Source: Rhodosorus marinus CCMP1338
Taxonomy: Eukaryota; Plantae; Rhodophyta
Direction of reading: 5' to 3'
Assembly (NCBI GenBank): GCA_029953675.1
Contig: JAMWBK010000002.1
Span: 620,001 to 684,000, forward strand
Length of the DNA: 64,000 bases
Of the stretch, positions 5,797 to 47,199 are shown piece after piece. Within the stretch, counting starts at the first letter, position 1. Every line of letters starts with the position of its first letter. Under the pieces are notes generated by a model, which made no database searches, was not told the origin of the DNA, and was given only the letters and a program-made list of their open reading frames with translations. The translations under genes and the position numbers were made by a program.

Positions 5797-7871
5797 ATGG
5801 CTGATACAGAGGAGAGAACTGGTAGAGCAAAGAACCGAAAGGAACGTCGGCAGAGTCTACAGGTAAAGAAAGAAGACAAGAGGAAGCGTGGTCCTAAGAA
5901 GGACGACAAGAAGAGAAAGAGGACAGATTCAAACGAGAAGGATGCCGGAGAGAAGCAGGCGAAAAGTCCAAAGGCCTTGAGGATCGAAACTGCTCAGGAG
6001 GCTAAAAAACTGTGGGAAAAATTGAGAAACAGGAAGGAGAAGGATAAGGGGTCTGATACCGAGCTGGTCGCGAAGATCATTGATGTGTTGCGTGGCGACC
6101 TGAACGGGTTCTCACATCGACATGATACTGCCAGGATTGTTCAGTGGGTTCTAAAATGTGGAAATCGTGAGCAGAGAAGTGAAGTTGTGCAGGGACTTTT
6201 GCCGCACGTTCTGCCCCTCTCCTCTGATCGCTATGGACGTCATGTCGTCATGTCAGCTTTGACCAAGGGGAGAGCCTCCAGAGGAGAGGTCCTAGCTATC
6301 TACGAACGATTTCGAGGCAACGTGTACAGCATGTGTAAAAATAATCTTTCCGCCGAGGTGCTAGATATGTTTTATCAGATGAATACTACATCTGGGCAAA
6401 GAAAAGAGCTATGTATAGAACTCCTCCACGGTGTGAACTTGACCAACACAGGTGCTTCTTGTTTAGCTGTAAGTACAAACCTGCAGGAATGGCTAAGTCT
6501 AGTCTCCAACCTTTTGTGCGCGGTTAGGCAAAGAGGGAAAGCTGCTATCTTCCTTTAGACAGAAGAAAAAGATGGCTTCGTCTCTGGAGGAGGTGATTGC
6601 GGAGGCGGGCCCGGAGTTTGGAAAGCTTCTTTACGATGGAACGAAGACAATTCTTATCGGGTTTGCGGAGAAGGAGGTGCTGAATGGCTTGCTTTCAGCC
6701 ATGAATTGAGCTCTGCATGCGCTTTATGTGGAAGAAGGTTTGAATGCTCAATGAGTCTTGTTCTTGTCCGTTCCCTACAGTCCACTGTGCGGTTGCAGAT
6801 CGTTCACGACGTACTCCACTACTTTCTCATATACGCCTGCGAGCACGACAAAGAGGGCGCGGCTGAAATGGCTGCACTCTACGCCCCGGTGGCAGTTCAT
6901 CTTATCCACACCAAGAACGGGGCCGCCAGTTTCGTTGCGTGCTTGAAACTGTTGGATGCGAAGAATAGGAAGAAACTCATCAAATCTGTTCAAGAGGATA
7001 TTCGTAAGATTTCAGAAGACCCGTATGGTCACCTGACAATTATGGCGTTATATGAACATGTGGACGACACCAAACTTCTTCAGAAAGCTGTTCTCAAACC
7101 CCACATCGGGAAATCAGATTCGGAGGTATGAAACCCTGCATACCGCACGGTTGTCGACGTCCATCTGGAGAAACTGATCAGGCGAGAAAAGCATGGTTTG
7201 TCTTCTTCCGAACAGGAGTTATCAACGCTTTTGCATAGGTATTCGAGCTTGCCGCTGCTCAATCTTTTAGCACCCCATGAAGGGCGTTACTTCAACCCTG
7301 CGAACTATGCGTTCGTGTGGACGGGGGAAACAAAGAGCGTAAAGGACGACAGCAAACGACGACAGGAGCTCGTAGACTTTGCCCTTCCACTACTGATCGA
7401 ATCTGCGCAGAAAAATGCTGTAGAGCTCTTATGTGATCCTGCTGGATCAAAAATCCTCCTCGAACTTGTTGTCAAGGACTCGCCATTGATCGAGGAAAGC
7501 TGGAAAACGGAAATACTGTCGAAAGTAGCGGATGCTCTAACAAAAGAAGTGGAACCAAGCGACGGAGAGGCAGATAGCTCTGGTAAGCCTGGTAGTCACA
7601 CCCCAGATTTTGGTGTTCGTACTTATACGTTCGATAACGATTTTCAGGCACACCGCAGATGCTTGACAGCGCGTCAGCGGTCAGAACCGCGAAGTACTTG
7701 ATCGCCTTGACCAAGGACGAGTCATACTCCCTAGGCGATCTTATACACGCTCGCTTGAAGGGAAATCTGGATCGACTGCAGAACGGCAAAAGCGACTTAA
7801 TCCTAAAGCAGATGTCAAAGATAGAGGGCTCCAAATACTACAAAGAAGCTTTGAGGGCCATGGAGGACTAA
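5797..7871 (+). CDS. PUF6: Puf6/PUM3/APUM24-type Pumilio-repeat (CPL domain) ribosome biogenesis protein, multi-exon
   Basis: Lys-rich N-terminus, then KKLWEKLR, HRHDTARIVQWVLKCG, LSSDRYGRHVV, HLIHTKNGA, EDPYGHL, YLFHDK-like LLNLLAPHEGRYF; GT-AG introns between ORFs. Confidence 0.88.
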
Positions 7872-12093: not shown

Positions 12094-13344
12094 CAGCGGA
12101 TATTTGGAACATGTGATCAAAGAAAACTAGATTCCGCGCATGGCACACACACTGTGGTTGCAAGCGGACTGATTCCCCCTACCCATCAGTCCCAGACTTG
12201 TACATATCAGAATAGACCTCTCAAGCGAGCAAGCTTACTGCGCGAGATGGCCGTGCATGGGCTGCATCGTTGTTTGAATCTCAACCGCTGACTATCTCAT
12301 AGTATTAACTGGTTCCATTCCACAGTAAAAAAGTCGGAACTTCAGCAAAGTAGAGTCGATCTTAAACCGGCCCCATTGCTCCTCAATAGCAAACATGTTT
12401 CCTCATATAACATATCTGTAACGCACAAGCTTGGAGTGAGAGACTAAAATGATCCGCCCAAGGTTCTTCCGGGGCATCCCGTGATACCCTTGGCTTGTGT
12501 GAACGTCAAACTCGAATGTTTGACGATGCCTTGCGACGTTCCCTTGTGGAGAGCGACCTTCCTCTGCTTACCAGTTAGCACTGTGCTTGTCCCAAGCTGC
12601 AGTACTACTTTTGCTGGAGGCTAACCAGCGACAAATAAGCCGCAGGAGACCGTAAGGGGAAGGACAGATTACGATGACTACGCCAAGCACTGCACGAGCG
12701 AAACTTGAACAAGCTGGGAGTCGAACTGCGAAGAAAAGGATATGTATCTTTGGCTCTTCGTTAAGAAGTTCACCAGTTTTATTTTCAGAATACGGAGAAC
12801 ATCGAAAGCTCATCTGACCATTGCCTCCAGACTTACTCGCCATAGTCTCCAGTGAAAGATTCCTTCCTGTGATCGAAGTCTTGATAGTCAACAACGGGGG
12901 AGTCAGCAACAGCAACGAACAGTACTCGACACAGGCAAGCGTAAAACATACGTAGAACGAAGCCCGTTGCTTCGGATCCAACTCGTTTTGAGACGATCCG
13001 TCCACTTCATGCCGAACATCTGTGGAAGATGATTAGTACATCGTACAAAATAGAAATAGACACGCAACCGCGAAAATGTTCGCGTGGAAAGTTTTTCCCG
13101 GGAAACAATGCTTGACGGAAAATGTCTTTAATGGCTGGCGGACGAACGAGTTTTTGTTGATGGTGAAGAGGGAGACTGTCGAAGTCTGTACTGAAGCCGT
13201 TGACTAAGATGAATCTGTTTTCCGGGCCTTTCTTTTAAGTTGGAGTATAAGTTCATCGCCTGTTCGTGAGAGGTGAAAACCGTTGAGCCTCTTCTAAAAA
13301 ACAAAAAGGGAAGAAATTCTGGCCCGTTTTGAGAGGACGACGTG

Positions 13345-14559
13345 ATGTTCCTGACCGACGTTCTGGTGGCCGACGGCGGTTTGCAGCAGAGCAGCGGCTC
13401 TGTGGATGTGGAGGAACTCTTTGGGGGATCTGAAAAGCTGAGGTTTCCGAAAACCACGCTGAGCGCAACCAACGAGGATTCGAATATGGATTTTGATGAG
13501 GGTTTGATGTCCACGATAGACTCGCCTGAGAAAGCCTACCTGCTAGGATGGATTGTGGACGGTCTTGGAGCAGAACCGGACCTTAAAGATCCCACGTTGG
13601 AAGTGCAGATTCACACGCAGCCGGAGGACATGGAGACTCTCCTGGTTCTTCGCTCAGTGTACAGGGAGGACGTCTCCGTTGAAGTACCAACTCCTCGACC
13701 TGGGAAGGACGTTCAAGCTTCGTTCTCCATCCTTTCAAGGCAGATGATCGTAGATTCTTGCAAGCATCTGGGGGTTAGTGCTGGAGAGCAAGCCACTTTA
13801 AGGTTTCCCAGATTCGACGATGAAGCACTGCTATGGGCATTTATCCGCGGACTCGTAGAGAGCAGCGGCCGCATCAACGACTTCCAGGAAGGTGGAACTG
13901 CAGAATGCTACGTCCAACACGGATCCCAGAAGCTCCTCAGCGAAATGGTGGCTAAGATTGAGATCCCAGTTCACACAACAGAGGAAGGATTCTGCTTCAA
14001 AGGGGTTAACTGTATCGACTTTTTGGGGAAAATGTACGACAACTGCGGCAACTACAAACTAGAGCGCCTCCACAACAAATTCAGAGCGTGGCTGAAGTGC
14101 GTACCGGCCTCTGGAGAGACTATACAGCTGCCAGAATGCTTGGTCTACAGAGTAGATGAGAACGCTATCCTGCCTAGCAAGTCCAAAGAGTCTGATGTTG
14201 GGTACGACTTGAGCGTAATCAAGGAAGCCAAGAAGCTGCGTGGCAATGTTTCGCTCTACGATACGGGAGTCAGGGTTCGCGTGAGCCATGGGTTGTACGC
14301 TGAAATAGTTCCAAGAAGCTCTCTCTCGAAAAGTGGATACATGATGGCAAATAGCGTGGGCATCATCGATCCTTCATACAATGGGAACCTCCTCGTAGCG
14401 CTTGTCAAAGTGGATCCGGAGGCGCCTGAAGTCACCTTCCCCTTCAGATGCTGTCAGCTAATATTCAGACAGCAGGTTCACGTGAACGTGAACGAGGTGG
14501 ACACAATGTTCGATGCCACGGAAAGAGGCGCAGGTGGTTTCGGAAGCACCGGAAAGTGA
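13345..14559 (+). CDS. DUT: dUTPase with N-terminal degenerate LAGLIDADG-like domain
   Basis: C-terminal dUTPase motifs: DVGYDL, VPRSS, GIIDPSYNG, CQLIF, RGAGGFGSTG. N-terminal IDSPEKAYLLGWIVDG and WAFIRGLVESSGRI resemble the two LAGLIDADG helices. Small upstream exons (about 13133-13333) are possible. Confidence 0.9.
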   Translation: MFLTDVLVADGGLQQSSGSVDVEELFGGSEKLRFPKTTLSATNEDSNMDFDEGLMSTIDSPEKAYLLGWIVDGLGAEPDLKDPTLEVQIHTQPEDMETLLVLRSVYREDVSVEVPTPRPGKDVQASFSILSRQMIVDSCKHLGVSAGEQATLRFPRFDDEALLWAFIRGLVESSGRINDFQEGGTAECYVQHGSQKLLSEMVAKIEIPVHTTEEGFCFKGVNCIDFLGKMYDNCGNYKLERLHNKFRAWLKCVPASGETIQLPECLVYRVDENAILPSKSKESDVGYDLSVIKEAKKLRGNVSLYDTGVRVRVSHGLYAEIVPRSSLSKSGYMMANSVGIIDPSYNGNLLVALVKVDPEAPEVTFPFRCCQLIFRQQVHVNVNEVDTMFDATERGAGGFGSTGK

Positions 14560-24550: not shown

Positions 24551-27500
24551 CTATCGCTGGCACAACGCCTCAAGTTGCTTCGTTAGTTCCGAAAACCGAG
24601 GCCTCTTCTCGGGAGAATCGTTCAAGCACTGCTTAATCATCTTTCGAAACTCCGGGATACACTCAATCCCGTCAGGAACATGAAGCTTCTCCCCGCAGCT
24701 TCCAACCTAGGATTGGTCAAGGAACGCCCATTTCAGCGGAAGGACGGGAAGAGTACCATTTTGCCTGTCATTGCCCTCCAGGGCTACAAACCTTGTACAC
24801 GATCTGCAGAGAATGACTATCTTTCCAGGGCTTCTCGCACATGACGAGTTCCCACAAAATAACTCCAAACGAAAACACATCAGATTGCTGATTGAACTTT
24901 TCCTGCCGCAGAGCCTCCGGGGCCATCCACTCAGGGGTTCCGTTGGGAGACGTGTTGCAGCGCGACTCGATCAGAGGTCTCGACAGACCGAAATCGGTTA
25001 CTTTCACCTAAAGGTCAGGATCAATCGCACCGCATAGTGAACGTCAGACGAGAAAATCCCGTACACGCTAAGACTGGGGTTACTTTAGTCTGGTCTTCGT
25101 CGATACTTACCTCAAGGACGTTTTTCCCGAGAAGAACGTTCGGTGACTTCAGGTCGCGGTGAATAATTATTGGATTAAGACCGTGGAGGTATGCCATACC
25201 ACGGGCAATACCAAAAGCTATATAAGCAGTCTTAACAAGTGGGAAAGGGCCCAAGCTCTGCCTTCTTCGTCTGTGAATGGCCCTATACAAACTTCCTCCT
25301 TGCATGTACTCAAGCAGAATGGCATAGTTTGGTGCCTGCAAGCTAGCGCCGAGGAACGATACAACGTTCTGGTGACTCAGTCGGCTCATCAGCTTAATCT
25401 CCAGCATGAACTCCGCGATCACGTCCTCCACCTCTTCATCTTCAATCTTTTGCAGTGTCTTCACTGCAACCATTTCTGTCTTATACTTGGCCTTATACAC
25501 CTGAAAACGGAGGAAAACCCAGGACGGTTTGCATTAAACACACGCAAACTATAAAACTAGGAGGAGCTTGAGTGAGTCCTTTTTGCTGTCTCGCTGTCAC
25601 TTTGAAGATACAATACCTCTCCAAATCCACCACCACCGATTCTCGGACCAAACACAAGCTGGCTAAAGTCTATCGACCATGCATCCTTCCAGTGTTGATC
25701 AAAGTACGCATTCACTATGCGGTCATCTTCACTTTCTCCAGGGTGGGCGGTATTAAATAGTTGATTATGTTGATTATCTTGCTGTCCTCCTTGTTTTTCC
25801 ATCATCAATTTGTCAGCAACGGTAAGTTGAGACCGCAGCATTGTGTCCGCCCTCTCCATGTTCGACTGTGTCGAGCGTACGGAGTGTTCGTCGCTCATTG
25901 GATCGAGCTTGACCTTTGAGTCTGGCGCCTGCACCATCGACAGAATGCCGTCCAGCAGCAAACGAGCCTTGTCAAAGGATCTACAAAAACCGAACCCGCT
26001 GACGTTAGAACAAGAAGTTCTACTTTGACGTATTCACGAGAGGTTAGACGACGACGTACTCTTCTCTGCAATCTATTCCCTCTGTAACGACAAGCCGGCC
26101 AGCCAGTGGAGTAAGATCGCAATTCTTCCAAAAGAGGGGAAGTATAAATCCTCCCTGTTCATCGAAATGACGGCAGTACGCAATTGAGAACGCTTCAGTG
26201 CATTCCACGTTGTTAAAGTAGTCATCCGACAACAACGAGAGAAACATTCTTGAGTGACTGATCGCATCCATATGCCTGGAAACAACACCCCTATCGCGAA
26301 CAGACATCATGGTCCTGGAAGAATAAGAAGCATTCTTGTCTCAGCATGCGCTAAGGAAAAGATCGAATTCAAACTTGCGGGCCCGTTGCCTACGTTGGCT
26401 CTGCGTTGTATATTCTAATGCTCGGCTCGTTGGTTCGCAAATAGTCGATCATCTGCATCGCGGTTTCGCTCTCGGCCACGGAGTAACTCAAAAATACGTC
26501 GTAGGACTGCTTAGTCTGGAGAAGGCTTGCGCCCATTAGCTTTTCCTTCATCCCAGCGAATATTTCCATATCCTTCGTGATATTATCATCGTTTGGTAGC
26601 AGTATCCTGACACTGGTCAGAGGGAGTCCCATCTGCATCCAATGGTAGCAGACCTCCGTTGTGACCTTCACAAAATGCTTTCTAAGGGATGGACTCAGCA
26701 AAGCTCCCGAGAGTGGTAGCATAACGGAGCTGTAGTCGGAAAAGAAACCAAACATCCGTGAGTAAAACATCGCTTATCTACGGGTTTTTTGACTGACTGA
26801 AACTACTGGAACTGAAAGAAGGCTTACCGTATCTGTATGTCTCCACCAATAACCGTCGTCAAGCACTTCATCACGTCAAGAACGATGTTGTCGTCTTTTG
26901 TCAACTCCTCTCCCGGGTCCTCGTAGACAAGGAGTCTCTTGTATTCGAGACCTACTGGTCTAGGCTTATGCAGAGGCCCAGACAACCAGCAGTGGTAGTG
27001 TCTTCTGTACGAAGGCTGCGGCTTTGTCTCCCCTTCCAAAGCACTCAGATCGATTCCACATCGATTCAGCCCAGCAAGTGCAGAATCTCGCTTCCCCTTG
27101 TAAAGACCGCGTTTTCTTAAGTAGACAATTAGCAGGTCCGTCTCATCTTCCCCTGAGAGCTTCTCCACGGATCCCTGCACCAACTCAATTCTTGCAACTT
27201 TATCCTTTCGATGTACATTGATGAAATCAAGATGCTTAAGGCCGAACTGTGCAGCGTCGCTGTGAGCCGAAGTCTCGTCACCGTTGTTCGTAACCCAGGA
27301 AACGACATCGACGAAATTGGAGTCCTCCGCATTATTATTTACACCGGGCTTGTTCAAAGCCCTTCGGGAGGAGGACGTCACCTCGGCCTTCGATCCAGGA
27401 ACACTTGATTCTCCTCTCTCTGCCATCGTCTCGGATTTTGGTCGAAAAAGTCCACGACGCTTTCCCGAACGAGATTGTCCACTCTTGGCGGTTGAATCTG

Positions 27501-27558
27501 ATTCAGGCCCATCCTTGTTGCTAGATTTCGACGACACAACAGATCCTCTATTCCCCAT
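24551..27558 (-). CDS. N-myristoylated Macro-like + TIR + Raf-like (TKL) protein kinase, 7 exons, 815 aa
   Basis: Exons 27558-26828, 26729-26394, 26314-26060, 25980-25617, 25500-25111, 25007-24792, 24706-24551. All junctions are GT-AG and phase-compatible; total 2448 nt. Motifs: MGNRGS; RIELVQGSVEKL..DLLIV; YDVFLSYS; LLSDDYFNNVECTEAFSIA; GGGGFGEV, VAVK, HRDLKSPN, DFG, GTPEWMAPE. Confidence 0.88.
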
Positions 27559-28153
27559 GTTAACTTATTCTATCTCACGAAACACACAAACAAAATCTGT
27601 ATTATCCTAAACCTGCTTTCGATACGGCTCTTACACCATCAGCAAAGCTTGCTAACTCAGTTCCAACCTCGTTTGCAACAAGAGCCAAACCGCTCATCAT
27701 TAAACCCTCGCTCACCTACCACCATCCCCTACTCTCACCCCAAACTAAACAACTCAACCGCCCTCCACCCCTCTGCTCCCTACTCCACCCAACCGCTTAA
27801 AGCCCTTGGATTTTTCAAACCAACCAGAAACCTCCCAACCTTGGCAAGCCCCCGTATCTGTCAGGCCTAACAGAAGAACAATAACTCTGTACCCCCACCA
27901 CCCCCAACCCCCCGACCCGCCCCGCCCCGCCCCCGTCTCAACAGCCAAGCAAGAAGATGCTCAACTCTTCATACATTCAACTCATCCATTTCCAGATTAA
28001 AAGCAACAAACAAACCTTAAAAAACCGAATCCAAAAAAAAACAACAAACCCGTAGTCCATATCACACCCACCTCCCCCTCCCCCTTCCCTCCTAAAACAG
28101 TCCTCCTTATAACCCTGAATACCCTTGCTAGATCCTCATGCCAACGTACATCC

Positions 28154-28213
28154 CCATCACCATCACCACTACCACCACCTCCACCACCACCACCACCACC
28201 TCCTCCTCCTCCA
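28154..28213. repeat. (CAC)n(CTC)n trinucleotide microsatellite
   Basis: ccatcaccatcaccactaccaccacctccaccaccaccaccaccacctcctcctcctcc. Confidence 0.8.
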
Positions 28214-29421
28214 CCCCTTCAGTACTATGCAGCTATGCAGAATACACACAGCTAGCTCCCCCGTTTCTCTTTGTCATCTTCCTCACCGCCATTTTTCCCA
28301 CTCAAACTTACAAAAAAAAGTCTCCTCCTTCCCCCCCGAAACAAAGAAAATTTCGTATTCTTTTTTTTTTAGTACACTAAAACCCTTCGAACGCTTATCC
28401 TTACACGGACGCGACCCTTTAGTACAAACCAGTTCCGTACTAAAGCAATATAGTAGTAATATTTTGAGTAGATAGTACAGAACAGGCTCCATAAAAAACC
28501 AACGCAACTTGAAATGTGCTATTTATCCGGTTGATCACCTAATACCCTCAACTTCAATAAAAAGGGAACAAAAATAGGGTTTATTTCTATCTCAAGTTGT
28601 CGTGGAAGGGGGGGGGGGGTGGAGGGAAAGAAATGATGCCTCGTGATCGTAGCAACATAGTGTACTACACCCTAGATGCCTGGACCGAAAATATGTATAA
28701 TATGGTTTTTTATTTAAACATTCAACAACAACGGTTCGAATATACCCCCCTACCCATTTGTCATTTGTGTGAGATATTGGGGTCTCCTATCCCTTGATTA
28801 TTTCACACAGCAAAGGGGTGTTGAAAACTCAAACTTTGCTTAACTTTTCATGCTCCATTTTTTTCCTGAAAATCTTTTGAAATACCGAAAATAAGGAGGC
28901 GGAAATTTCTATTTTAGAAAGGCTAAAATGAAACGGAAATTCATATAAAAATAATTGAAATAAAATTGTCCTCTCTATATTAAATGAATAAATGCATATA
29001 TTTATTAGTTAAAAGTAAGAAGATACTCTTCAGCGACAATAGTTAAGGGGGGGTCGTGGATATCCGCACAACGGGAAATGCCAAAATGGAAAGAAAACTT
29101 CTCAGAATGTCACTGAGAGAGGAATAGGGGAAGGGGGATGAGGTTATATTTACAGGTAGAATTGTGGGGGATAAAAGAGTTTGGATTTTTAGAGTATCTC
29201 TTGCAGTAGAAGAGCAACCACAACAGTCCACACATGGACGGGAGACTCTCCGGGAGCGTTGGGATGGTAATGGACTGGTAAGAGACTCACCTAGTTAGGA
29301 AGGAGTAAGCAATAATCCCGGTGTTGTAAGCTGAAACTCTTCAAAACGATACACATATTTCCGACATCTTGTTTGCGCCGCATCACGCACTCGACTTAGA
29401 CAGTTTCCGAGTATTTTCCCA

Positions 29422-33000: not shown

Positions 33001-33873
33001 TTAGGTGCTGGATTCACCGAGGGCCTCAACCTTCAAGGACGGATCCAAATCCCAGCAGATGGGAGTGTTTCCAGTAAGTGCGTAGACAAGGCCTTCCAAC
33101 TTCCTGAAAAATTTGGTCCTATCCAGGAAATCGTTGCACACACCGTTTACGATACAGTAATTGCCTTCGAACGGATTGCGGTGGTGTTGGCCATGAACCT
33201 TGGTTGATATCAACAGACCAGCGGCCATGAGAAACTTAACCGGTGCGCTCGGTCGCTGCATGTGGGACCACTTGTGGAATTCCTGAGCCAATACCGAAAG
33301 AGTCACAGTCGTGCATAGGAAGGCCTCAACAGCAACTGGCATTTGAAAGGCCAACATCAATGCGAACATGGGAATCCCGACAATTGCCGGCCTCGAAATG
33401 TTGTTGAACAGCCCGCGGTTCGTAATGGTCCAGGGAGAGGCATGATGTCCCTGGAAAGCTTCAATCTGGTAGCCGAAAACTGGAGTATCCTTGGTCCCGT
33501 AATTGTCCAGCGCCCAGTGGTAAATTCCACTTCCAGCGTCAGCAAACAGATATCCAGCCGCCACTCCGAGCAAAGCTGTTGCCAGACCAAAACCAGATCC
33601 AACTTGCGTGGACAAGGAAATAGCCTCCGCTGCAGCCAGCATACCAGCTCCTAGAACGGAACCAATCATCCACGGCTCATCTTGTAGTTTGTCACCCTCT
33701 GTATGCAGTACGGGTTCTCTTCCCCTGTTCTTCTCCTTCAGCGGTTCCGTCCTCACTGATCCCACTCGTGGAGTTTCCACTACACTCACGGTACACCTTC
33801 GGCGCTTCTCCACACACTTCGTCCCTCTCACTCCGGTCACAGTGGACCACGCGCTCACCCCCACGAAAGCCAT
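33001..33873 (-). CDS. FAD4: Plastid fatty acid desaturase 4 (FAD4/TMEM189/CarF family)
   Basis: MAFVG transit peptide; ADAGSGIYHWALDNYG, FQGHHASPW, QEFHKWSH, HGQHHRNPFEGNYCIVNGVCN His motifs; intronless. Confidence 0.93.
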   Translation of the reverse strand: MAFVGVSAWSTVTGVRGTKCVEKRRRCTVSVVETPRVGSVRTEPLKEKNRGREPVLHTEGDKLQDEPWMIGSVLGAGMLAAAEAISLSTQVGSGFGLATALLGVAAGYLFADAGSGIYHWALDNYGTKDTPVFGYQIEAFQGHHASPWTITNRGLFNNISRPAIVGIPMFALMLAFQMPVAVEAFLCTTVTLSVLAQEFHKWSHMQRPSAPVKFLMAAGLLISTKVHGQHHRNPFEGNYCIVNGVCNDFLDRTKFFRKLEGLVYALTGNTPICWDLDPSLKVEALGESST

Positions 33874-36537: not shown

Positions 36538-39500
36538 TTAGGAAACGACTGCTGGCTTCGAGCTCGACAATCCAGCCCTCCGCTTGTATATCTGAAGGAG
36601 CTTCGGGCCTAGCTCTTTCAGAAGCTTGTATTCCGGGATCATGTCCACTGCATTCTGGGATTCATCGGACTCCGTGAACTGGTTTTCCATCGAAAACGTA
36701 GCGCGCGTAAGTGTCAAGCTGATACAAAAGAAACACGTAATTGAGTTGCGCGTTTCTCGCCTACCTTCTCGTACGCTACTAGGCATTCGTTCGCGCTTTC
36801 CATCGCCTCCTCTTCGCTGTGGCTATCTATCCATTCGACCATGTACTTTGTAGACCATTGCATTCGTCTATGCGGCTGTAATAGAGGAGCGCGAGCTCGT
36901 CCAAGTATATGGATAACGACGCAGCTAGGTTTGAGCTCGCTCAACATCTCGAGCAAGTTGTCGTCTATTGATGCCAGCTCATCGATCTCCATCTGAACAA
37001 GCTTTCGGAACGCGCGAAAGGCGCTGTAGGACTCTCCCAGATCCTAATTCGACCAATATGAGAGGTAATACAGCGCAACTGTCAAGAGCTAGTTGCCAAA
37101 AAGCTAAGGGCTAGACCGATGACTATGCGTTGGCAATCACCTTTTGAGCGCAGACTTTAACAACTACTGCCTCAAGTTCAGACATGTCGGCGGCGAGAAC
37201 GGTTCTTCGTCTTAGGTCAAGCGACCACAAGAGTGAAGCGTGCAGCACAAACTTGCTCAAGGTTTGCCGAGCTAGAGTGTGGACACTCATCGACAGCGCC
37301 CGTGATCGGACTACCCTGTCCAGGGATTCAGTCTTAAATCTTCGAAGCTTCTCAGATAAGACGAGGATGTATCTTTCCTTCATGTGAGTTGTCGACTCCG
37401 CTGAAGCTTTGCCTTCCTCGTTCATAAAGTCATCCTTCATCTTCAGCAAAGAACTGTCCACGGTTGTTCGAATCTACATGAAGCACGTAGTTCCGGATAT
37501 TAGTGACTGCGCTGCGTATTGAGGAGAAAAGCGGGAGCAGTAACCTACATCCAGGAACAACTTCTCCAAGAAAGTCTCTGACAGCGCTGTAAGGACCTCC
37601 GCCGCTTCAGTCACCTCCTTTCCATTCGTGATCTGGAGACCGAACATAGTATGGGCAGCAGCTCCCAGCGCGTAAAGACCTTGATTTGACATAAAGCGCG
37701 AAACCTCAGAACGCGAGCGCTGGTGCAAAAGGAAGCAACCTGCGAAGTCAACTTCTTCCAAACAGTCGGGGACGTACCGTCATAAAGGTCGCTTACGCTC
37801 TTGTCTTTTGCGTCTCCGAGCACCTCCTGGGCTTTCCCCGCGTACATATACAGCGCAGCTGCAACGTTCTTCGACGAGTTCACGAACAATTTGGGATCAC
37901 TCATGGTGCTTGAGAGCTCCGCCGCAAACAATCTAGCTAGCCCGTTCGCTGCGATCGTGCCCGGAGAGGGTGCATCCGGGCGGAACAAACTGATGATCGG
38001 ATCAGTGACACGCGAAAGGGATAGAGCGAGGTATTGCTTCTCTATCGGTAGGAGAGCGTCGAGGAAGTAGCCATCCAGCTCATCCCGAGTGATTACGGAG
38101 CCAGAGACGAATCCATCCAGTTGAGAAAGAGTAGCGGTGTTCATCAGTCGATCACAGAGGCTCCCAAAAATCTGCAACAACCTCGGATAGTCGTCACAGA
38201 GCGCGTGGAAAAGTACGGCTCCAGGAGTAAGCTGGTCGGTTCGGGGGAAACATGATGACGATTGTTAGACTCAATTCTACTCTTTCGAATTCAGGTGTTT
38301 GGGTTGATCTTACAGACTTGGCTCTATTTAGGGATCGGATGTGGTCCAGAAAATTCTTCGTGAAAAGCTTGAAAAAGGCCCGACAAACATGGAGTTCAGT
38401 TGCGTTGTTGAGAAAACTTGGGACCGTGGGGTCCTGTTTCCATTGGAGTACAAACTAGAAGAAGGAAAGAGGCTGGATGAGCAAGCGACGGCTTCAAGGG
38501 GTACATCTTTCGCATCCGTTTGTGCACTAAAACGTGGGATCCATACCTGCAACTTGATGATTTGTACTATTACGTCGTGTAGCTGCTCCATCGCGCCATC
38601 CAATCGCTTCCACATTTCAGGTGGGGCTATGTCGGCACGTGTGCTTTGGGCCGTCTTTTGCACCACTTGTTTGGTGTCAAATCCCTCGATGATTGCTTTT
38701 TGAGCTTGTGCGACCAGATTCTTCACCTCAACATTAAGCCGTTCCTCAAGGTTGCCTAAAAGGGCGAGCGACTGCAGAGCCGCGGCAATGATTAGCGGAT
38801 CACCGCTAGCCATCGCGTTCCTAAGCGTATCCGTGACCTTATTTTTGTACTCGCTGCTGGCTTTTCGTATAGCGGGGAGTTCTCTGGCAACAATGTCCAC
38901 CCGATCAAGTGGTGGCGTTTTTGCCAGCTCTTCCAACTCCCGAACAGCTTCAGCAGTGGATTTTAGACCATCCGCATCCATGCTATCGTTGCTGTTACAA
39001 AATGATTGCAGCTTGTTGCTACAGGTCTGGAACCGTACAACCTGCTGCAGCAAATCTGCCGCCAAGGCGGCGTTTTTCATCTTGTGGATTGACCTCTGAA
39101 TCTTTTCGAACGGGTCGTTCAGACTGTCGACAAGCTGGTCCGTTGTAGTTGCGAGTTTGTTAAGTCCATCGGATAGGGACTCTATCTGCTGCTCAAGAGC
39201 ACTGACAGCCTCCACCTCACCGAGCAAAGCGTCCTGTCTCCTTATTACCTCCTCTCTAACCTGCGCTGAGACAAGATTCGCCGCGTTCTCTGTTTCTTGA
39301 AGAGACCTGGAGACCGTCCCATTTCCGATCGCGTTCCCCACATGTTTCACAGCGTCGAAGTCCTCAGAGAGGAAGAACTTGAGGCTGCTGTCGGTCTTAA
39401 AGCTCGATAGAATCGTGTTCAATTGGTTTCCCACATTTTCACTGTTGAGGTCGAGAGTTTCCATCCCCGGCAGCTCCCCCCCCGCAAGCATTCCGGGTAT

Positions 39501-39599
39501 AGGGGACATCAGTGGGGATCCCAGACCACTCCCAGCGTAGCTCCATGGGCTCTTCGCCGGTGATCTAGATCCAAGCTGAATCTTAGATGGGGTCGTCAT
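36538..39599 (-). CDS. COG5: Conserved oligomeric Golgi complex subunit 5, multi-exon
   Basis: N-terminal FLSEDFDA..VREEVIRRQDALL..LNDPFEKI..ADLLQQVVRF; C-terminal FVLHASLLWSL..LAADMSELE and PSCVVIHILGRARAPLLQPH..WIDSHSEEE. Confidence 0.82.
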
Positions 39600-40919
39600 C
39601 ACTTCACCTTCATTCCGGAATAATGAAACAATACAACACGGTCATCTGATACACCCGGTCATTATACCAGCGGCGTCTTCCCCTCCAAAATACTGCGTTT
39701 GTCAATCCGCTGTCTAATAGATTCCAACCCAGCGAGGGATTGGTTTTTGACGAGTGCTTCGAACTCTGAGCAAGGAGCAAAAGAGCGTAAAATCAAGCTC
39801 GGTTCTCAGAACGCTTGCCTGAGAGGCATTTCTAGAGCTCCATTGCTCAATGGGTGGATGCTTGGCTCACTGGGCCTTTGCACGAGACCTGAAGAAATCT
39901 ACTATCACGTGGGTTTTGGTTTGGGTTTGATAAACGATGAACGGAGCTAGATATCCTTTGACCTGGACCTGTTGCTCACGGATTGTCTGAAGAGGGATTA
40001 GCAGGAAGCCTCAGGCACGCCGGGCTAAGGGGAAGGTTGAAAACACCCCGAGAGCACAGGTTCTTGCAGTCTTCGACCGCTGCTTGAGAAACTCACGTTT
40101 GAATGATCAGTGCTCTACCGGCTTTCTAAAGACTGTTGCTGCACCGTGGGACAGAGTTCTGCTATACCAGAGACCAGAAATCTTCCGCAGATGATCAGAA
40201 CCAACGCTAGTATCCGTTTGCGTCCGGTCCCGTAACCTCCAGCCTGGCAAGCGTTCGGACATAACTCATGCCGATCCCTCCTTCAAGTGCCCCAATCTTG
40301 AATCCACCGGGGAAGGGATCCTAACTGTATTCTGAATCCTCAGAAGCAAACACAAAGCTGAAGACAGACCGTACATGTTGCCAACATCACTCTTTCCATC
40401 CACCTCGACGTCAACCTCCAACGCTTCCAAACTTTCTAAAACAAGCCCGTTTCTGACTCAACATTTCTAATAAATCCTAACCATATTTTCTCAACCTCCC
40501 CCCTTTTACATTTCTTTTTACTGCATAATTATTTAGAAAACAACTTTATTGATGTTGATCTACCCCTGTCAAATCTTTCTTCGACGTTATTTATGTTCAG
40601 TTGTTCTTAATTTGAGATTTCTCTGACCGCCGTGGGGATGGATTGGTTGGTGTGCCAGTCGATGAAGACGACGTCGCGAGGTATCTGCAGCGCTTAGGGG
40701 GTGTTAGGGATGTGGCGTGAGTTTTGCTATTGGGAGCGTAGCTGTTAGCGTAGCTTTTTTTGGTGACGTAGTGAAAGTCTTCATCATAATGATTTAGACT
40801 AGGCGGATAATTTGCAGTGAAATTTTGGAAGCGAAGGAAAGAGCTGAGGCGGTTGTGTTCGTCGTTTTGCCGGGGGGAGGGGAGGGGGGTGGTTTGGTTA
40901 AGAAATAGGATGGCGTTGT

Positions 40920-44280: not shown

Positions 44281-45537
44281 TTAGATATGGAGCCGTTTCC
44301 GTATGCATCTGAAAATCTCACCTTTGCAGAAGAAGGCTGGGCTTTCCTCCGCTAGCGGATCCTCGAGAACAAGCTTCGTTGCTTGCCGAGATAAGCAGAC
44401 CTGAGAGTGCACATCCCGAACGTCGTGAGCAATAGTTACCTGCTGGGTACGGAGACGCTCATGACAGCTGATAATCACGCAAAGTCTTCACTCACCGTGC
44501 ACTTTCTTGTTCTTCCGGGCAGCTGGTAGACTGTCATTGGAAACGATTCCGGCCCAGATGCCTCGAGCCCGAAACTCCTTGAGTGCAGGTCTCGAAAGAC
44601 TATAAGATGCTCGCAGTTTTGCTATAATACAGTAAAACACAAAAGAAAGATGCCAAAGTCGTGGTTCAGCTGCGGAGATATGTGAACGGTGAGGTTTGAA
44701 GCCATCTCCTACTCTGTGAACATAGATATACGGAAACCCGAGACGAATCTTCAGCCTATCAAACGTTGTAGAGGACATCTCTTCTATGGACAGGTTCGAG
44801 TAGTTCAAGCTTGGCGCCGCGTTCACAGCAGCTTCACGAAATTCCGACTTGATTCGCTTTCGAGACGACGCTGCTCGCGTGGTTTTCTTAGGTGTTTGCC
44901 TCCATTGCTGCTTGTGCCTATCAAGAAACTGCTTGACTGTAGCGGAGGAATCTCCAGGTCCACCACATCCGTAAAAGACGCCTTCGATAAAGAAGAACCC
45001 GCCATTGGAGACATTTTCACTGGCTTCGTCGATTCTACAGGAGATCTTCGTGCTGAGTGCATCCAGCTTCTGGTTGCTAAGAACGAGGAATTCCTGCGAT
45101 TTGTTCGCTCGAGTGGACTCATAGACGGCGACATGGACAACAGCCACTTCTTCGCCGCCCCCTCCATCATGGGGCCGAGATGGCGCCATGTTCGCTTCGC
45201 GGCCATTTTCCGTGGTTAGTTCGAGGGGAGTGAAGGGCTTCTTCGTCAGGACTTTCAGCCGATAAGACTTCAGGGCACAGTCTGTATCGACTAGAGTTCC
45301 TTCCTTGTCCTCATCATCAGCTCTAGCCTTATCTACATTGCTGCGCCGTCCTCTTCTACGAGCAGGCAGAGGTGGTCGAACTTGCCGAAGTCCATTCACA
45401 TCAACTCCATCAAGAAGCCTGGAAGGGTCTTCCTCCTTGACGGAACTCACAAACTGAGAAAAATCTTGCAACTCAGCACCAAATTCGCCCACGCTCAACA
45501 AATCTGAGAACCCCTTTCGAAGTTGCTCATCCACCAT
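44281..45537 (-). CDS. SNAPC3: snRNA-activating protein complex subunit 3 (SNAP50)
   Basis: QEFLVLSNQKLDALSTKISC, GFFFIEGVFY, MSSTTFDRLKIRLGFPYIYVH, CLSRQATKLVLEDPLAEESPAFFC; 3' end approximate. Confidence 0.85.
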
Positions 45538-47199
45538 CACGGACAATCCTGTCACACGACGATGCCTGCTGTAGAGCAGCTCAGTCCTCTAAGAGGGCCA
45601 TATTAAGTACATCGATGATTGTCAAGAGAGTCAGCCACACAAGGAACAAGATCCTTTCTTCTGGAGGAGTCTGACACCCCGAAGACGCGGGCAAATGGTT
45701 TCTTGGTAATGCACGGAAGCTTCCAACCTTCTCAAACAGAGAGAATCCTTCAAGGGCCAGACTAACTTTGCGTGTCTTCGACTTTGACGAAACGCACTAT
45801 GACCGGATTGAGAAGACTCAGCAGGCTATACTAGAACTACCGTACAGAGGCCAATGTAGGTTGGAGAATGGCAGGCGTCGTCACAAGATCGACTCAACAT
45901 GCTGTAGCGACCAAGGGCGGTGAAGTCCTCCTTTTCAGCCCAAAAAGCATAGAGCGGGTGCTGGAGACACGCTCGGCAGCTGGATAGTACAAACGTCTGG
46001 CAGCCGCCCATGAACAGCACGGCAACAAGGCAGGCTTCAGAAGGGAGCACAGGGAGTCTCTCTCCGGAACCGCATCCAGACCAACTGGAAAAATAATCTG
46101 TTCCAGCTTATCAAAAAATAAGACTATATAAAGCCAAAGGTCTTATCTGAAAAAATCCATTCGCGTGGCGGGTTGAGAAAAACGACCCACTCCATCCCTT
46201 CCCGCCACTGCCGTACCTCGGAAAAAACTTGTCTCTTTCACGTGGCGCCGGGGAGATATGGATAATTCTCCCTGCAAAGACCCATCTGCATTAAGTACCG
46301 GGAAAAAAAAGAGAACATCGAGCACGTTGCTACTATGTTAGCAGCCCAACGTCCACCTTCTTCCCTAAACTGGAGAACCAAAAGGAATTTGAACCTCGTC
46401 AAAGCCCACAACAAACATGATTAGTACACATTAGTAAATAAAACATGTACTGAAATTACACTGCCAGGATTTCTTCAGTCAATTCTAGACTGAAGCCCTT
46501 GTAGACCATTTTCTTCTCAAAAACAAAAGTCAAACGACCTTCCAAAACTTCCAACTCGGCTGCTTACAGTAGCAATCATTTTGAAAATCTAGTTGACTGC
46601 TTTATACCGTGAAACTCGTCGGCATATTCTACCAACAAATGCTGGAATAATACGGTTTATGCTTTTATTTTGAGGAAAATAATCAACTCATTATCGTACT
46701 ACTTGGTAATTGTACGGTCCTGTCGTCAGTTTATTTTTGACTGAATATAGTATATTGACTGTATATCAGTCATTATATTTGTTTGTTTGGTGCGTTTTTT
46801 TTTTCCGTTGATTGGGGGCGGGGCGGGTTTGCTGTCGGGTTTTCTTTCTTTCTACATATATATAGACTTCCGTGCAAATGTCTGCACCGACCACATGGAG
46901 GAGCTGGCTTGGGTTTGGTGGCAAGAAGACTATGACCCAGATGATCTTAATCCGACTATTGTTGCTATTGGAGAGTGCTTACGGATTGCTTTTTTTTTCT
47001 GAGCGAAGGTGTTTTTGTTAGATATCTGTAAGTGTAACTGCTTGCTTTGGTCAGATTTTTTTTTGGAGGCGTTACTGTGGGTTTTTGTGGTTTAGGATCT
47101 GACCTGCTTCTTTAGGAAGCTTGCGGGTTGGTTTTTGTTCTTAATCGGAGTAGACGCACCTAGCTCTGATCTTTGTGTGATCCCTGGATTGTCGTCAGG

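What the first reader, a model, noticed from the sequence alone, without database searches (positions are those of the whole stretch)
24551..27558. Membrane-anchored Macro-like + TIR + Raf-like kinase: candidate undescribed immune-type signalling receptor in a red alga
Seen in sequence: seven phase-compatible exons give one 815-aa protein. It has an MGNRGS myristoylation motif, a domain opening like a Macro fold (RIELVQGSVEKL..TDLLIV, later SVMLPLSG, CYHWMQMGLPL), a TIR (YDVFLSYS..SRMFLSLLSDDYFNNVECTEAFSIA..ILPLFW..IDCRE), a Gln-rich linker, and an intact TKL kinase (GGGGFG, VAVK, HRDLKSPN, DFG, GTPEWMAPE). Established: TIR NADases need a Glu three residues after the Cys in the WC-x-x-E helix; Macro folds bind ADP-ribose derivatives; TIR and Macro domains pair up in bacterial Thoeris defence; in animals TIR scaffolds recruit IRAK kinases of the TKL group. 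Here the catalytic-Glu position is Ala (C-T-E-A), and the Macro GDIT motif reads GSVE. Inference: a scaffold TIR plus a nucleotide-sensing-like module wired in cis to a kinase, a one-protein analogue of TIR-adaptor-IRAK signalling. The Macro assignment is the least certain part.
Basis: partly seen in the sequence, partly recalled or inferred. Interest (0 to 1): 0.88.

Follow-up and report, generated by a model that had tools for sequence, protein, structure and literature searches.

The report
Red-algal Macro–TIR–Raf-like kinase fusion
This is a real, intact red-algal gene for a lipid-anchored signalling kinase whose regulatory half is a Macro+TIR pair related to prokaryotic NAD/ADP-ribose proteins. 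Both of those domains have lost their usual active-site residues, so the protein probably signals by assembly and phosphorylation, not by NAD chemistry.

Summary
Seven GT..AG-bounded exons on the minus strand (27558-24551) give an 815-aa protein. It aligns without gaps across all six splice junctions to a complete transcript-derived orthologue from Agarophyton chilense.

- **Domains.** AlphaFold2 plus Foldseek shows residues ~105-312 are a Macro fold (macroH2A, E=8e-8) and ~318-445 a TIR. The kinase is closest to Arabidopsis CTR1 (E=3e-61), with all catalytic motifs present.
- **Relatives found here.** The Macro+TIR pair belongs to a large family of ~345-aa prokaryotic proteins (1064 cluster representatives). 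In that family a divergent Macro is directly followed by a TIR in every member inspected. Extra fusions include NUDIX, Hsp70-like, CHAT/NB-ARC and pseudokinase domains.
- **Lost residues.** Prokaryotic members keep the TIR catalytic Glu (109/109) and Macro-type motifs. All eight red-algal sequences have Ala instead of that Glu, and the Macro motifs are replaced. The module is still 56-67% identical across red-algal classes.
- **Membrane and immunity.** No transmembrane segment exists; only a conserved N-myristoylation motif.

Best reading: an active MAP3K-like kinase controlled by an exapted, non-catalytic Macro–TIR module. An immune role is unproven. "TIR+Pkinase" genes were already listed for Pyropia, one mildly pathogen-induced.

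The parts
24551..27558 (-). Whole coding region: 7 exons (27558-26828, 26729-26394, 26314-26060, 25980-25617, 25500-25111, 25007-24792, 24706-24551), 815 aa plus TAG
   Evidence: Spliced and translated. All introns are GT..AG. Alignment to the transcript-derived orthologue P0138 is gapless across all junctions.
27538..27558 (-). N-myristoylation motif MGNRGSV (Gly2, Ser6)
   Evidence: Read from the sequence. M-G-x-x-x-[S/G/A] is conserved in P0002, P0004, P0005, P0006, P0008/P0279, P0009 and P0138. Lipidation itself is inferred.
27259..27558 (-). Ser/Gly/Asn-rich, poorly conserved N-terminal region (aa 1-100), predicted disordered
   Evidence: pLDDT is about 30 over residues 1-100 in the full-length model. 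Length and sequence vary among orthologues.
26525..27246 (-). Divergent Macro-fold domain (aa ~105-312; contains intron 1)
   Evidence: AF2 pLDDT 89.8. Foldseek matches macroH2A, YmdB, AF1521 and PARP14/9 macro domains at E=8e-8 to 1e-4, TM-score 0.61-0.73 normalised to the target. The profile of prokaryotic relatives hits PARP14 macro at E=7e-7 and AF1521 at E=1e-3 by sequence. There is no Pfam Macro hit for the alga itself. The Macro-type motifs are replaced.
25968..26509 (-). TIR domain (aa ~318-445; contains introns 2 and 3)
   Evidence: Pfam TIR_2 scores 32.9 bits against a cut-off of 28. Foldseek matches the MAL TIR at E=2e-5, TM 0.70. The family profile hits the TLR2, MyD88 and L6 TIRs at E=1e-11 to 1e-13.
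26191..26193 (-). Codon for Ala397, at the position of the TIR catalytic Glu (C-T-E-A)
   Evidence: At this column, Glu occurs in 109/109 prokaryotic relatives and Ala in 8/8 red-algal sequences. The column aligns to the Glu of TLR2 W-C-K-Y-E.
25668..25967 (-). Linker (aa 446-545) with two conserved short motifs: (L/I)A(D/E)KLLMK, and FFD..W...WA(I/V)DF just before the kinase
   Evidence: Orthologue alignment. pLDDT is low apart from short helices.
24572..25652 (-). CTR1/Raf-like (TKL group) protein kinase domain (aa 551-809; contains introns 4-6), with all catalytic motifs present
   Evidence: Pfam PK_Tyr_Ser-Thr E=1e-59. The best solved relative is Arabidopsis CTR1 at E=3e-61, followed by MLK1, DLK, ZAK and RAF. 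GGGGFG556, VAVK576, HRD676-678, DFG697-699 and APE721 are present.

Best explanation
**What it is.** The gene lies in a Rhodosorus marinus nuclear assembly and encodes a cytoplasmic kinase that is probably N-myristoylated. The catalytic half is an active CTR1/Raf/MLK-like (MAP3K-type) TKL kinase. The regulatory half is a Macro–TIR dyad homologous to a widespread prokaryotic two-domain module.

**What changed.** In prokaryotes the module keeps the TIR NADase Glu and Macro-type ligand-loop residues, and is fused to NAD/ADP-ribose-related and conflict-system domains. In the red-algal lineage the dyad was joined to a eukaryotic kinase. The TIR Glu and the Macro motif residues were replaced, and the new sequence was then frozen under strong purifying selection.

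**Proposed mechanism.**
- The Macro–TIR unit no longer makes or hydrolyses NAD-derived nucleotides.
- It acts as a regulatory, assembly or partner-binding unit at a membrane surface.
- Its self-association or partner binding brings kinase domains together for trans-autophosphorylation.
- The output is a phosphorylation (MAPK-type) cascade, plausibly in stress or defence signalling.

**Shown:** gene model, the three folds, loss of the canonical residues, conservation, intact kinase motifs, absence of a transmembrane segment.

**Inferred:** myristoylation, non-catalytic status, oligomerisation-driven activation, direction of transfer from prokaryotes, and any immune role.
For: - **Gene model and single-protein architecture.** (complete 860-aa Agarophyton transcript ORF). 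In another red-algal assembly, one search shows Macro–TIR and kinase ORF fragments adjacent on one contig.
- **Folds.** (Macro and TIR; kinase, CTR1 E=3e-61).
- **Homology to the prokaryotic dyad.** (1064 representatives at E<=1e-3, 274 at E<=1e-30).
- **NAD/ADPR flavour of the ancestral module.** Sequence-level hits to PARP14 and AF1521 macro domains. Fusions to NUDIX, extra TIRs, CHAT+NB-ARC and Hsp70-like domains.
- **Loss of canonical residues.** TIR Glu is 109/109 in prokaryotes and Ala 8/8 in red algae. Macro Asp is 102/109 in prokaryotes and variable S/A/H/K in red algae. Ser-Ala (109/109) becomes Tyr-Leu. The loop-2 Gly (109/109) becomes Leu 8/8.
- **Strong constraint afterwards.** 56-67% identity over the Macro–TIR region among the red-algal sequences found. 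Named hits come from Rhodosorus, Porphyra and Gracilaria/Agarophyton; P0006, named Rhodosorus marinus, is among those aligned.
- **Active kinase motifs and no transmembrane segment.**
- **Conserved MG...[S/G/A] N-termini.**
- **Weak link to defence.** One Pyropia 'TIR+Pkinase' gene was up 1.5-1.6-fold on Pythium infection (PMC6928737).
Against: - No experiment or transcript data exist for this species.
- 'Catalytically dead' rests on motif loss only. Glu396, one residue before the lost Glu, is invariant in red algae. The remodelled Macro loops are rich in invariant Arg/His/Lys (RKRG, YRRHYH, SLRKH), which could form a new ligand site.
- Oligomerisation is not shown.
- The full-length model gave no usable information on contacts between the domains.
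- The NJ tree places the red-algal clade on a long branch outside all sampled prokaryotes, so the direction of transfer is not resolved.
- The Pyropia genes were not shown to be orthologues.
Confidence: 0.55

Rival explanations
1. The Macro-like domain still senses an ADP-ribose-type nucleotide, made elsewhere or by a pathogen. The scaffold TIR relays this to the kinase, giving a single-chain immune receptor analogous to TIR-adaptor-IRAK.
For: - The Macro fold is real.
- Relatives are embedded in NAD/ADPR-type architectures.
- The remodelled loops carry invariant basic residues that could bind phosphates.
- A Pyropia TIR+Pkinase gene is mildly induced by an oomycete.
Against: - The highly conserved Macro-type motif residues of the prokaryotic family (Asp of GD 102/109, Ser-Ala 109/109, loop-2 Gly 109/109 and 94/109) are all replaced.
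- The adenine-contact position is unconstrained in red algae.
- There is no Pfam Macro signal.
- The very high conservation is atypical of pathogen-facing receptors.
- The kinase is MAP3K-like, not IRAK-like.
Confidence: 0.2
2. The TIR and/or Macro remain enzymes using non-canonical residues, for example Glu396 or the new Arg/His cluster. The protein would both make or process a nucleotide signal and phosphorylate targets.
For: - Glu396 is invariant in red algae.
- The module is under very strong constraint.
Against: - Position 396 is not conserved in the prokaryotic family (E70 D21 M9 L5), whereas 397 is Glu in 109/109. The catalytic role therefore belongs to 397.
- A one-residue shift on an alpha-helix points the side chain elsewhere. 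This is an inference from helix geometry.
Confidence: 0.12
3. A conserved housekeeping or developmental MAP3K with no role in immunity. The Macro–TIR is simply a docking domain for a red-alga-specific partner, as the CTR1 N-terminus docks on ethylene receptors.
For: - Slow evolution and presence across red-algal classes.
- CTR1 is the nearest solved kinase.
- The genomic neighbours are ordinary housekeeping genes.
Against: - TIR domains are overwhelmingly associated with immunity or cell death (established knowledge).
- There is weak pathogen induction of a TIR+Pkinase gene in Pyropia.
- This rival overlaps mechanistically with the best explanation and differs only in biological role.
Confidence: 0.3
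4. Gene-model artefact: the Macro–TIR part and the kinase part are separate neighbouring genes.
For: ORF-based gene calls in public collections split orthologous loci into pieces.
Against: - The seven exons are phase-compatible with canonical splice sites.
- A complete transcriptome ORF in Agarophyton (860 aa), MMETSP Rhodosorus transcripts and a GenBank Gracilaria protein (870 aa) all carry the domains in one chain.
- The linker motifs are conserved.
Confidence: 0.02

Closest known systems
Prokaryotic ~345-aa Macro-like–TIR proteins, annotated only as 'TIR domain-containing protein' (e.g. Candidatus Methanocrinis natronophilus, Beijerinckiaceae MAG)
   Same: They are homologous over the whole Macro+TIR unit, 22-30% identical and co-linear, with shared invariant residues W191, E213, W274-x3-GLP and D-C-R-E.
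   Different: - They keep the TIR catalytic Glu and the GD / SA / G-x-x-G Macro-type motifs.
- They have no TKL kinase. Where a kinase-like domain is fused it is N-terminal and has a degenerate catalytic loop (HGN or HNN instead of HRD).
- They are uncharacterised. There is no Pfam model for the Macro part, and PADLOC matches only the TIR.
Type II Thoeris (ThsB TIR + ThsA Macro effector)
   Same: It pairs a TIR with a Macro domain in NAD-derived signalling (bioRxiv 10.64898/2025.12.03.692087).
   Different: - Thoeris uses two separate genes. The TIR is an active signal synthase, and the Macro is the sensor of a membrane-pore effector.
- Here both domains are in one chain, in Macro-then-TIR order, with catalytic and ligand residues lost and a kinase as output.
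Animal TLR/IL-1R – MyD88 – IRAK pathway
   Same: Non-enzymatic scaffold TIR domains lead to activation of a TKL-group kinase. The family's TIR profile is closest in sequence to the TLR2, TLR15 and MyD88 TIRs.
   Different: - There are no death domains and no leucine-rich-repeat or Ig ectodomain.
- The kinase is fused in cis.
- It resembles CTR1/MLK/RAF, not IRAK.
C. elegans TIR-1/SARM1 acting on the NSY-1 (ASK1) MAP3K and then p38 (established knowledge; not tested here)
   Same: A TIR protein acts directly upstream of a MAP3K-type kinase in stress and immune signalling.
   Different: TIR-1 is a separate protein and needs its NADase Glu. Here the Glu is lost and the MAP3K-like kinase is fused.
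Arabidopsis CTR1/EDR1 Raf-like MAPKKKs
   Same: CTR1 is the nearest solved kinase domain (E=3e-61; HRDLKSPN, GTPEWMAPE). These kinases also have a long N-terminal regulatory region that tethers the kinase to a membrane-located partner.
   Different: The CTR1/EDR1 N-terminal regions are not Macro or TIR domains. Orthology was not tested by phylogeny.
macroH2A1.2/macroH2A2-type non-ADPR-binding macro domains
   Same: They are the best structural matches. They are examples of Macro folds kept as interaction modules after loss of ADP-ribose binding (established knowledge).
   Different: They are histone-linked, and sequence identity is only 12-16%.
'TIR+Pkinase' genes py01330.t1 and py08661.t1 of Pyropia yezoensis (Tang et al. 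2019, PMC6928737)
   Same: They have the same listed Pfam architecture in a red alga, and one is induced 1.5-1.6-fold by Pythium porphyrae. They are probably orthologues or paralogues (compare the Porphyra-type hits P0013 and P0014).
   Different: They are only tabulated. The Macro domain, the Glu-to-Ala change and the prokaryotic relatives are not reported. Orthology was not tested here because the sequences are not held.

Membership tests
TIR domain superfamily | Match to a TIR profile above the curated threshold | tested here: met
   PF13676 TIR_2 scores 32.9 bits against a cut-off of 28, over residues 322-444.
TIR domain superfamily | Flavodoxin-like TIR fold | tested here: met
   The AF2 model (pLDDT 89.8) matches the MAL TIR at E=2e-5, TM 0.70.
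Enzymatic (NADase/cyclase) TIRs | Catalytic Glu in the alpha-C helix, three residues after the conserved Cys | tested here: not met
   The position is Ala397. It is Ala in 8/8 red-algal sequences and Glu in 109/109 prokaryotic relatives. The column aligns to the Glu of TLR2 WCKYE.
Macro domain superfamily | Match to the Pfam Macro profile | tested here: not met
   There is no hit for the algal protein at E<=1. The only hit is 0.16 (12.4 bits) for the prokaryotic relative P0015.
Macro domain superfamily | Macro fold (three-layer alpha/beta/alpha with a mixed sheet) | tested here: met
   Foldseek matches macroH2A macro domains at E=8e-8 and TM 0.66-0.73, and also YmdB, AF1521 and PARP9/14 macros. 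21 of 25 PDB sequence hits of the relatives' profile are Macro-containing chains, with PARP14 at E=7e-7.
Macro domain superfamily (ADP-ribose-binding members) | Ligand motifs: Asp of G-D-[IL]-T, and the Gly-containing phosphate loop 2 (G-x-[YFQ]-G) | tested here: not met
   Red algae have G-[SAHK]-V-E and S-G-A-L-L-S-P. Prokaryotic relatives keep D (102/109) and G (109/109 and 94/109). Binding itself was not assayed.
TKL-group Raf/CTR1/MLK-like protein kinases | Kinase profile match and intact catalytic motifs (GxGxxG, VAVK, HRD, DFG, APE) | tested here: met
   PF07714 E=1e-59. All motifs are present.
TKL-group Raf/CTR1/MLK-like protein kinases | Closest relatives are Raf-like or MLK MAP3Ks | tested here: met
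   CTR1 at 3e-61, then MLK1 and DLK at 1e-47, ZAK at 3e-43 and RAF1 at 8e-39. IRAK is not among the best 60. No phylogeny was done.
Thoeris defence system | Operon of a TIR signal synthase (catalytic Glu) plus a separate effector with a sensor domain | tested here: not met
   This is a eukaryotic intron-containing single gene without the catalytic Glu. PADLOC gives no hit for the algal Macro–TIR.
Myddosome-type TIR-adaptor-IRAK signalling | Death domains linking adaptor and IRAK kinase | tested here: not met
   There is no Death-domain hit in Pfam. The kinase is not IRAK-like.
N-myristoylated proteins | Met-Gly start with a small or hydroxyl residue at position 6 | tested here: met
   MGNRGS here. 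MG-x3-[S/G/A] occurs in eight orthologue N-termini. Lipidation itself is not testable with these tools.
Transmembrane receptor kinases | Signal peptide or transmembrane helix and an ectodomain | tested here: not met
   The maximum 19-residue Kyte-Doolittle mean is 1.37, inside the Macro domain core.

The most novel reading that the evidence does not exclude
Red algae independently wired a non-catalytic TIR to a TKL kinase, this time in a single chain. They did so by capturing a prokaryotic Macro–TIR NAD/ADP-ribose module and rebuilding the Macro pocket (new invariant Arg/His/Lys loops) to sense a different ligand or partner. The protein would then be the core of a defence or stress signalling pathway ancient in red algae, in which ligand-driven TIR assembly activates a MAP3K.
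Probability: 0.25. Interest if true: 0.85.

Novelty: new variant of a known kind. Interest (0 to 1): 0.6.

Why it matters
TIR domains work in two ways. They act as NAD-cleaving enzymes (bacteria, plants, SARM1) or as passive scaffolds that recruit kinases (animal TLR signalling). How the second mode arose from the first is an open question.

This family offers a dated natural example outside animals. Its prokaryotic relatives have an invariant catalytic Glu. In the red-algal clade the Glu is fixed as Ala, the neighbouring Macro pocket is rebuilt, and an active MAP3K-like kinase is attached in cis. The whole arrangement has been kept across red-algal classes.

It gives red-algal biology a concrete candidate signalling node, relevant to nori and agarophyte aquaculture diseases. 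It also brings to attention a large prokaryotic Macro–TIR dyad family (≥1000 sequence clusters). No characterisation of that family was found, no Pfam model matches its Macro half, and PADLOC matches only its TIR.

Tried and rejected
- **Pfam on the algal protein.** It gave no Macro hit.
- **phmmer of the algal Macro–TIR against PDB.** Only marginal hits, E>=0.5.
- **PADLOC on the algal Macro–TIR.** No hit. The Macro assignment therefore needed the prokaryotic relatives and a structure model.
- **An 8-sequence mixed profile against PDB.** Only sub-threshold Macro hits, E~0.3. A prokaryote-only profile was needed to reach significance.
- **Genomic context of two prokaryotic members.** No consistent partner gene or clear defence island. 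One unannotated 401-aa gene lies upstream in three archaeal loci.
- **NJ tree of 117 Macro–TIR sequences.** The red-algal clade is monophyletic but on a long branch outside all sampled prokaryotes, so the direction and donor of transfer stay unresolved.
- **Full-length AF2.** It modelled the kinase and linker poorly (shallow alignment, pLDDT 65.7) and said nothing about domain packing.
- **Exact look-up of the spliced 815-aa protein.** Public gene calls for these assemblies appear to be ORF fragments.
- **Literature searches for a described Macro–TIR dyad or red-algal TIR-kinase.** Only the Pyropia table entry was found. Absence from the held library is not proof.
- **Plant TIR 'group 16'.** The survey's Discussion links it to protein kinases, but its Results describe the TIR as followed by a P-loop NTPase domain, so it is not a TIR-kinase precedent.
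- **Rejected readings.** Transmembrane receptor; two separate genes; IRAK-type kinase.
Full report
**Observation.** On the minus strand of the window, seven exons (27558-26828, 26729-26394, 26314-26060, 25980-25617, 25500-25111, 25007-24792, 24706-24551) splice through six GT..AG introns of 79-116 nt. They give a 2448-nt reading frame encoding 815 aa. The ATG at 27558 is preceded by an in-frame TAA nine bases upstream. The coordinates given (24551-27558) are exactly the coding region.

**Is it one gene?** A search with residues 81-462 found red-algal proteins that are 57-79% identical to it. They include sequences named Rhodosorus marinus, Gracilaria domingensis and Porphyra umbilicalis, and several carry both TIR and kinase Pfam domains.
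- The cluster of P0138 contains a complete transcriptome ORF from Agarophyton chilense (GEZJ01000855.1, 860 aa). It also contains GenBank KAI0556668 of Gracilaria domingensis (870 aa, 'Serine/threonine protein kinase').
- The window protein aligns to these over 794 residues at 55-56% identity, with no gap at any of the six exon junctions.
- In another red-algal assembly the Macro–TIR ORF and kinase ORF fragments are adjacent on one contig.

The single-chain architecture is therefore well supported by comparison, although not by transcripts from this species. An exact match of a neighbouring gene places the window in assembly GCA_029953675.1. That assembly was deposited as Rhodosorus marinus (PMC10250338).

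**Domains.**
- *Pfam.* It reports PK_Tyr_Ser-Thr (551-809, E=1e-59) and TIR_2 (322-444, 32.9 bits against a cut-off of 28), and nothing for residues 1-320.
- *Structure.* An AlphaFold2 model of residues 105-462, built on a 117-sequence alignment, has mean pLDDT 89.8 and pTM 0.74.
- *Foldseek against the PDB.* The first domain matches macro domains: macroH2A1.1/1.2/2 at E=8e-8 to 1e-6 with TM 0.66-0.73 normalised to the target, then the Oceanobacillus macrodomain, E. coli YmdB, AF1521 and PARP9/PARP14 macros. The 'SPX' entries in the list are chimeras with Core histone macro-H2A.1 (5iit/5lnc; molecule name). The second domain matches the MAL TIR (E=2e-5, TM 0.70).
- *Kinase.* It is closest to Arabidopsis CTR1 (E=3e-61), then MLK1, DLK, MLK4, ZAK and RAF1. 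IRAK is not among the best 60. GGGGFG, VAVK576, HRD676-678, DFG697-699 and APE are intact.
- *Membrane.* There is no transmembrane segment (maximum hydropathy 1.37). Residues 1-100 are predicted disordered.
- *N-terminus.* The start M-G-x-x-x-[S/G/A] is shared by eight orthologues with complete N-termini. That fits N-myristoylation, which is inferred and not shown.

**Relatives outside red algae.** The first search also returned ~347-aa proteins that align over the whole Macro+TIR unit at 23-29% identity.
- A profile search found 309 such proteins.
- An exhaustive search of 1.84 billion cluster representatives found 1064 at E<=1e-3, of which 274 at E<=1e-30.
- Named members come from Bacteria and Archaea: Beijerinckiaceae, Proteobacteria and Candidatus Methanocrinis.
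- A profile of prokaryotic members alone reaches macro domains by sequence: PARP14 macro at E=7e-7 and AF1521 at E=1e-3. 21 of the 25 hits are Macro-containing chains. G-D-L-T aligns to G-D-I-T, and A-M-P-L-V-A-A-G-D-Q-G aligns to I-A-F-P-A-V-S-A-G-I-Y-G.
- In all 20 longer representatives scanned, the Macro-like domain is directly followed by a TIR. Additional fused domains are NUDIX, Hsp70-like ATPase, VipA/VipB sheath, CHAT plus NB-ARC, FHA, a second TIR, glycosyltransferase, OGFr_N and N-terminal kinase-like domains. Two of those kinase-like domains have HGN or HNN in place of HRD.
- No Pfam model matches the Macro half, and PADLOC matches only the TIR half.
- I found no paper describing this dyad in the held library.

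**What changed in red algae.** Column counts compare 8 red-algal sequences with 109 prokaryotic ones.

| Position | Prokaryotic relatives | Red algae |
|---|---|---|
| TIR catalytic position (3 after the conserved Cys; aligned to the Glu of TLR2 WCKYE) | Glu 109/109 | Ala 8/8 (A397) |
| Preceding position (396) | variable | Glu 8/8 |
| Macro: Asp of G-D | 102/109 | S, A, H or K |
| Macro: Ser-Ala after strand 3 | 109/109 | Tyr-Leu |
| Macro: first loop-2 Gly | 109/109 | Leu |
| Macro: second loop-2 Gly | 94/109 | Pro (7 of 8) |

Residues likely to be structural are shared by both groups: W191, E213, W274-x3-G-L-P and D-C-R-E. Red algae add their own invariant, largely basic motifs: R-K-R-G, Y-R-R-H-Y-H and S-L-R-K-H.

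Despite these replacements, the seven other red-algal sequences aligned are 56-67% identical to the window protein over the module; named hits elsewhere come from Stylonematophyceae, Bangiophyceae and Florideophyceae. This is the signature of exaptation followed by strong purifying selection, not decay.

**Mechanism proposed.** The most economical reading has these parts:
- An active MAP3K-type kinase is held at a membrane by a myristoyl anchor.
- It is regulated by a non-catalytic Macro–TIR unit.
- That unit works through self-association or partner (or novel ligand) binding. Non-enzymatic TIRs do this in animal TLR signalling, and non-ADPR-binding macro domains do it in macroH2A1.2/2.
- Clustering would allow trans-autophosphorylation and a downstream phosphorylation cascade.

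The closest animal logic is TIR-1/SARM1 acting on the NSY-1/ASK1 MAP3K rather than MyD88 acting on IRAK. The closest plant logic is CTR1, a Raf-like kinase docked by its N-terminal region to a membrane partner (both from established knowledge).

The steps from 'motifs lost' to 'non-catalytic', and from 'TIR present' to 'oligomerises', are inferences. An immune role is suggested only by the general biology of TIRs and by a 1.5-1.6-fold induction of one 'TIR+Pkinase' gene of Pyropia yezoensis by Pythium porphyrae (PMC6928737). Orthology of that gene was not tested. The slow evolution of the family argues against a pathogen-facing receptor and for a conserved hub.

**Rivals.**
- Non-canonical catalysis through Glu396 is possible but unlikely (~0.12).
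- A purely non-immune role is quite possible (~0.3) and differs only in biology, not mechanism.
- A gene-model artefact is very unlikely (~0.02).

**Evolution.** The dyad is abundant and architecturally diverse in prokaryotes. Among eukaryotes it was seen here only in one red-algal clade, which favours transfer into a red-algal ancestor followed by fusion to a eukaryotic TKL kinase. The NJ tree, however, only shows a monophyletic, long-branched red-algal clade and does not identify a donor. Kinase-like domains have joined the dyad separately in prokaryotes (N-terminal, degenerate) and in red algae (C-terminal, active).

**Novelty and score.** The components and the general logic (TIR upstream of a kinase; TKL kinases with varied sensor domains) are known. 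'TIR+Pkinase' has been listed for a red alga. New here are:
- the demonstration that the N-terminal domain is a Macro fold;
- the link to a large prokaryotic Macro–TIR family for which no characterisation was found;
- the fixed loss of the NADase Glu and of the Macro-type motifs;
- the conservation of the three-part protein across red-algal classes.

I rate it a new variant of a known kind, interest 0.6. Nothing in this work required a referred step.

Noticed in passing
window 59349-60215 (-): An ORF with a WWE domain (E=1e-16) and a weak RING-finger match (zf-RING_2, 21.5 bits, below the 27.3-bit cut-off), about 32 kb from the focal gene. It may be a poly/iso-ADP-ribose-reading E3 ligase. No link between the two genes is shown.
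   Followed up: partly
window 28125-28475 (+): Overlapping His-rich and Thr-rich low-complexity ORFs (a CAC/CAT/ACC-type simple repeat) lie about 600 nt upstream of the focal gene's start, in the presumed promoter or intergenic region.
   Followed up: no
window 13342-14559 (+): A dUTPase domain (aa 274-404, E=6e-21) is preceded by a ~270-aa N-terminal extension with no Pfam match in the same ORF.
   Followed up: partly
window 5797-6558, 33001-33873, 38328-39602, 44488-45555, 47958-48773, 53725-54555: The neighbouring long ORFs are ordinary nuclear housekeeping genes: FAD4-like lipid desaturase, COG5, SNAPC3, ERO1 and a pseudouridine synthase. The window therefore looks like normal red-algal nuclear DNA (GC 48%).
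   Followed up: partly
P0006 (MMETSP/UniRef 'Rhodosorus marinus') versus the window protein: The window maps to an assembly deposited as R. marinus. Yet the MMETSP R. marinus homologue is the most divergent red-algal sequence (51-58% identity, with PLMGGLLSHS in loop 2). It is either an old paralogue in the same species or the strains are not conspecific.
   Followed up: partly
L004 6639-7844, L005 6639-7844, L006 6013-7218: In three archaeal-type loci (archaeal-type shikimate-pathway DHQS nearby), the prokaryotic Macro–TIR gene (P0048) is preceded on the same strand by a conserved 401-aa gene with no Pfam hit. A ParE toxin gene (two of the three loci) and an RNase H gene lie nearby. The 401-aa gene may be a partner.
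   Followed up: no
P0164 (aa 14-276) and P0215 (aa 46-279): Metagenomic proteins with an N-terminal kinase-like domain fused to Macro–TIR have HGN or HNN instead of HRD, so they are likely pseudokinases. They keep the TIR catalytic Glu (CLEEF/CLEEY).
   Followed up: partly
P0143 and P0149 (NUDIX–Macro–TIR); P0152, P0180 and P0202 (VipA/VipB sheath–Macro–TIR); P0153 (Macro–TIR–CHAT–NB-ARC): These are unusual fusions of the dyad. Partners include an ADP-ribose-pyrophosphatase-type domain, contractile-sheath proteins, and caspase-like/STAND modules. They suggest a mobile effector or sensor cassette in prokaryotic conflict systems.
   Followed up: partly
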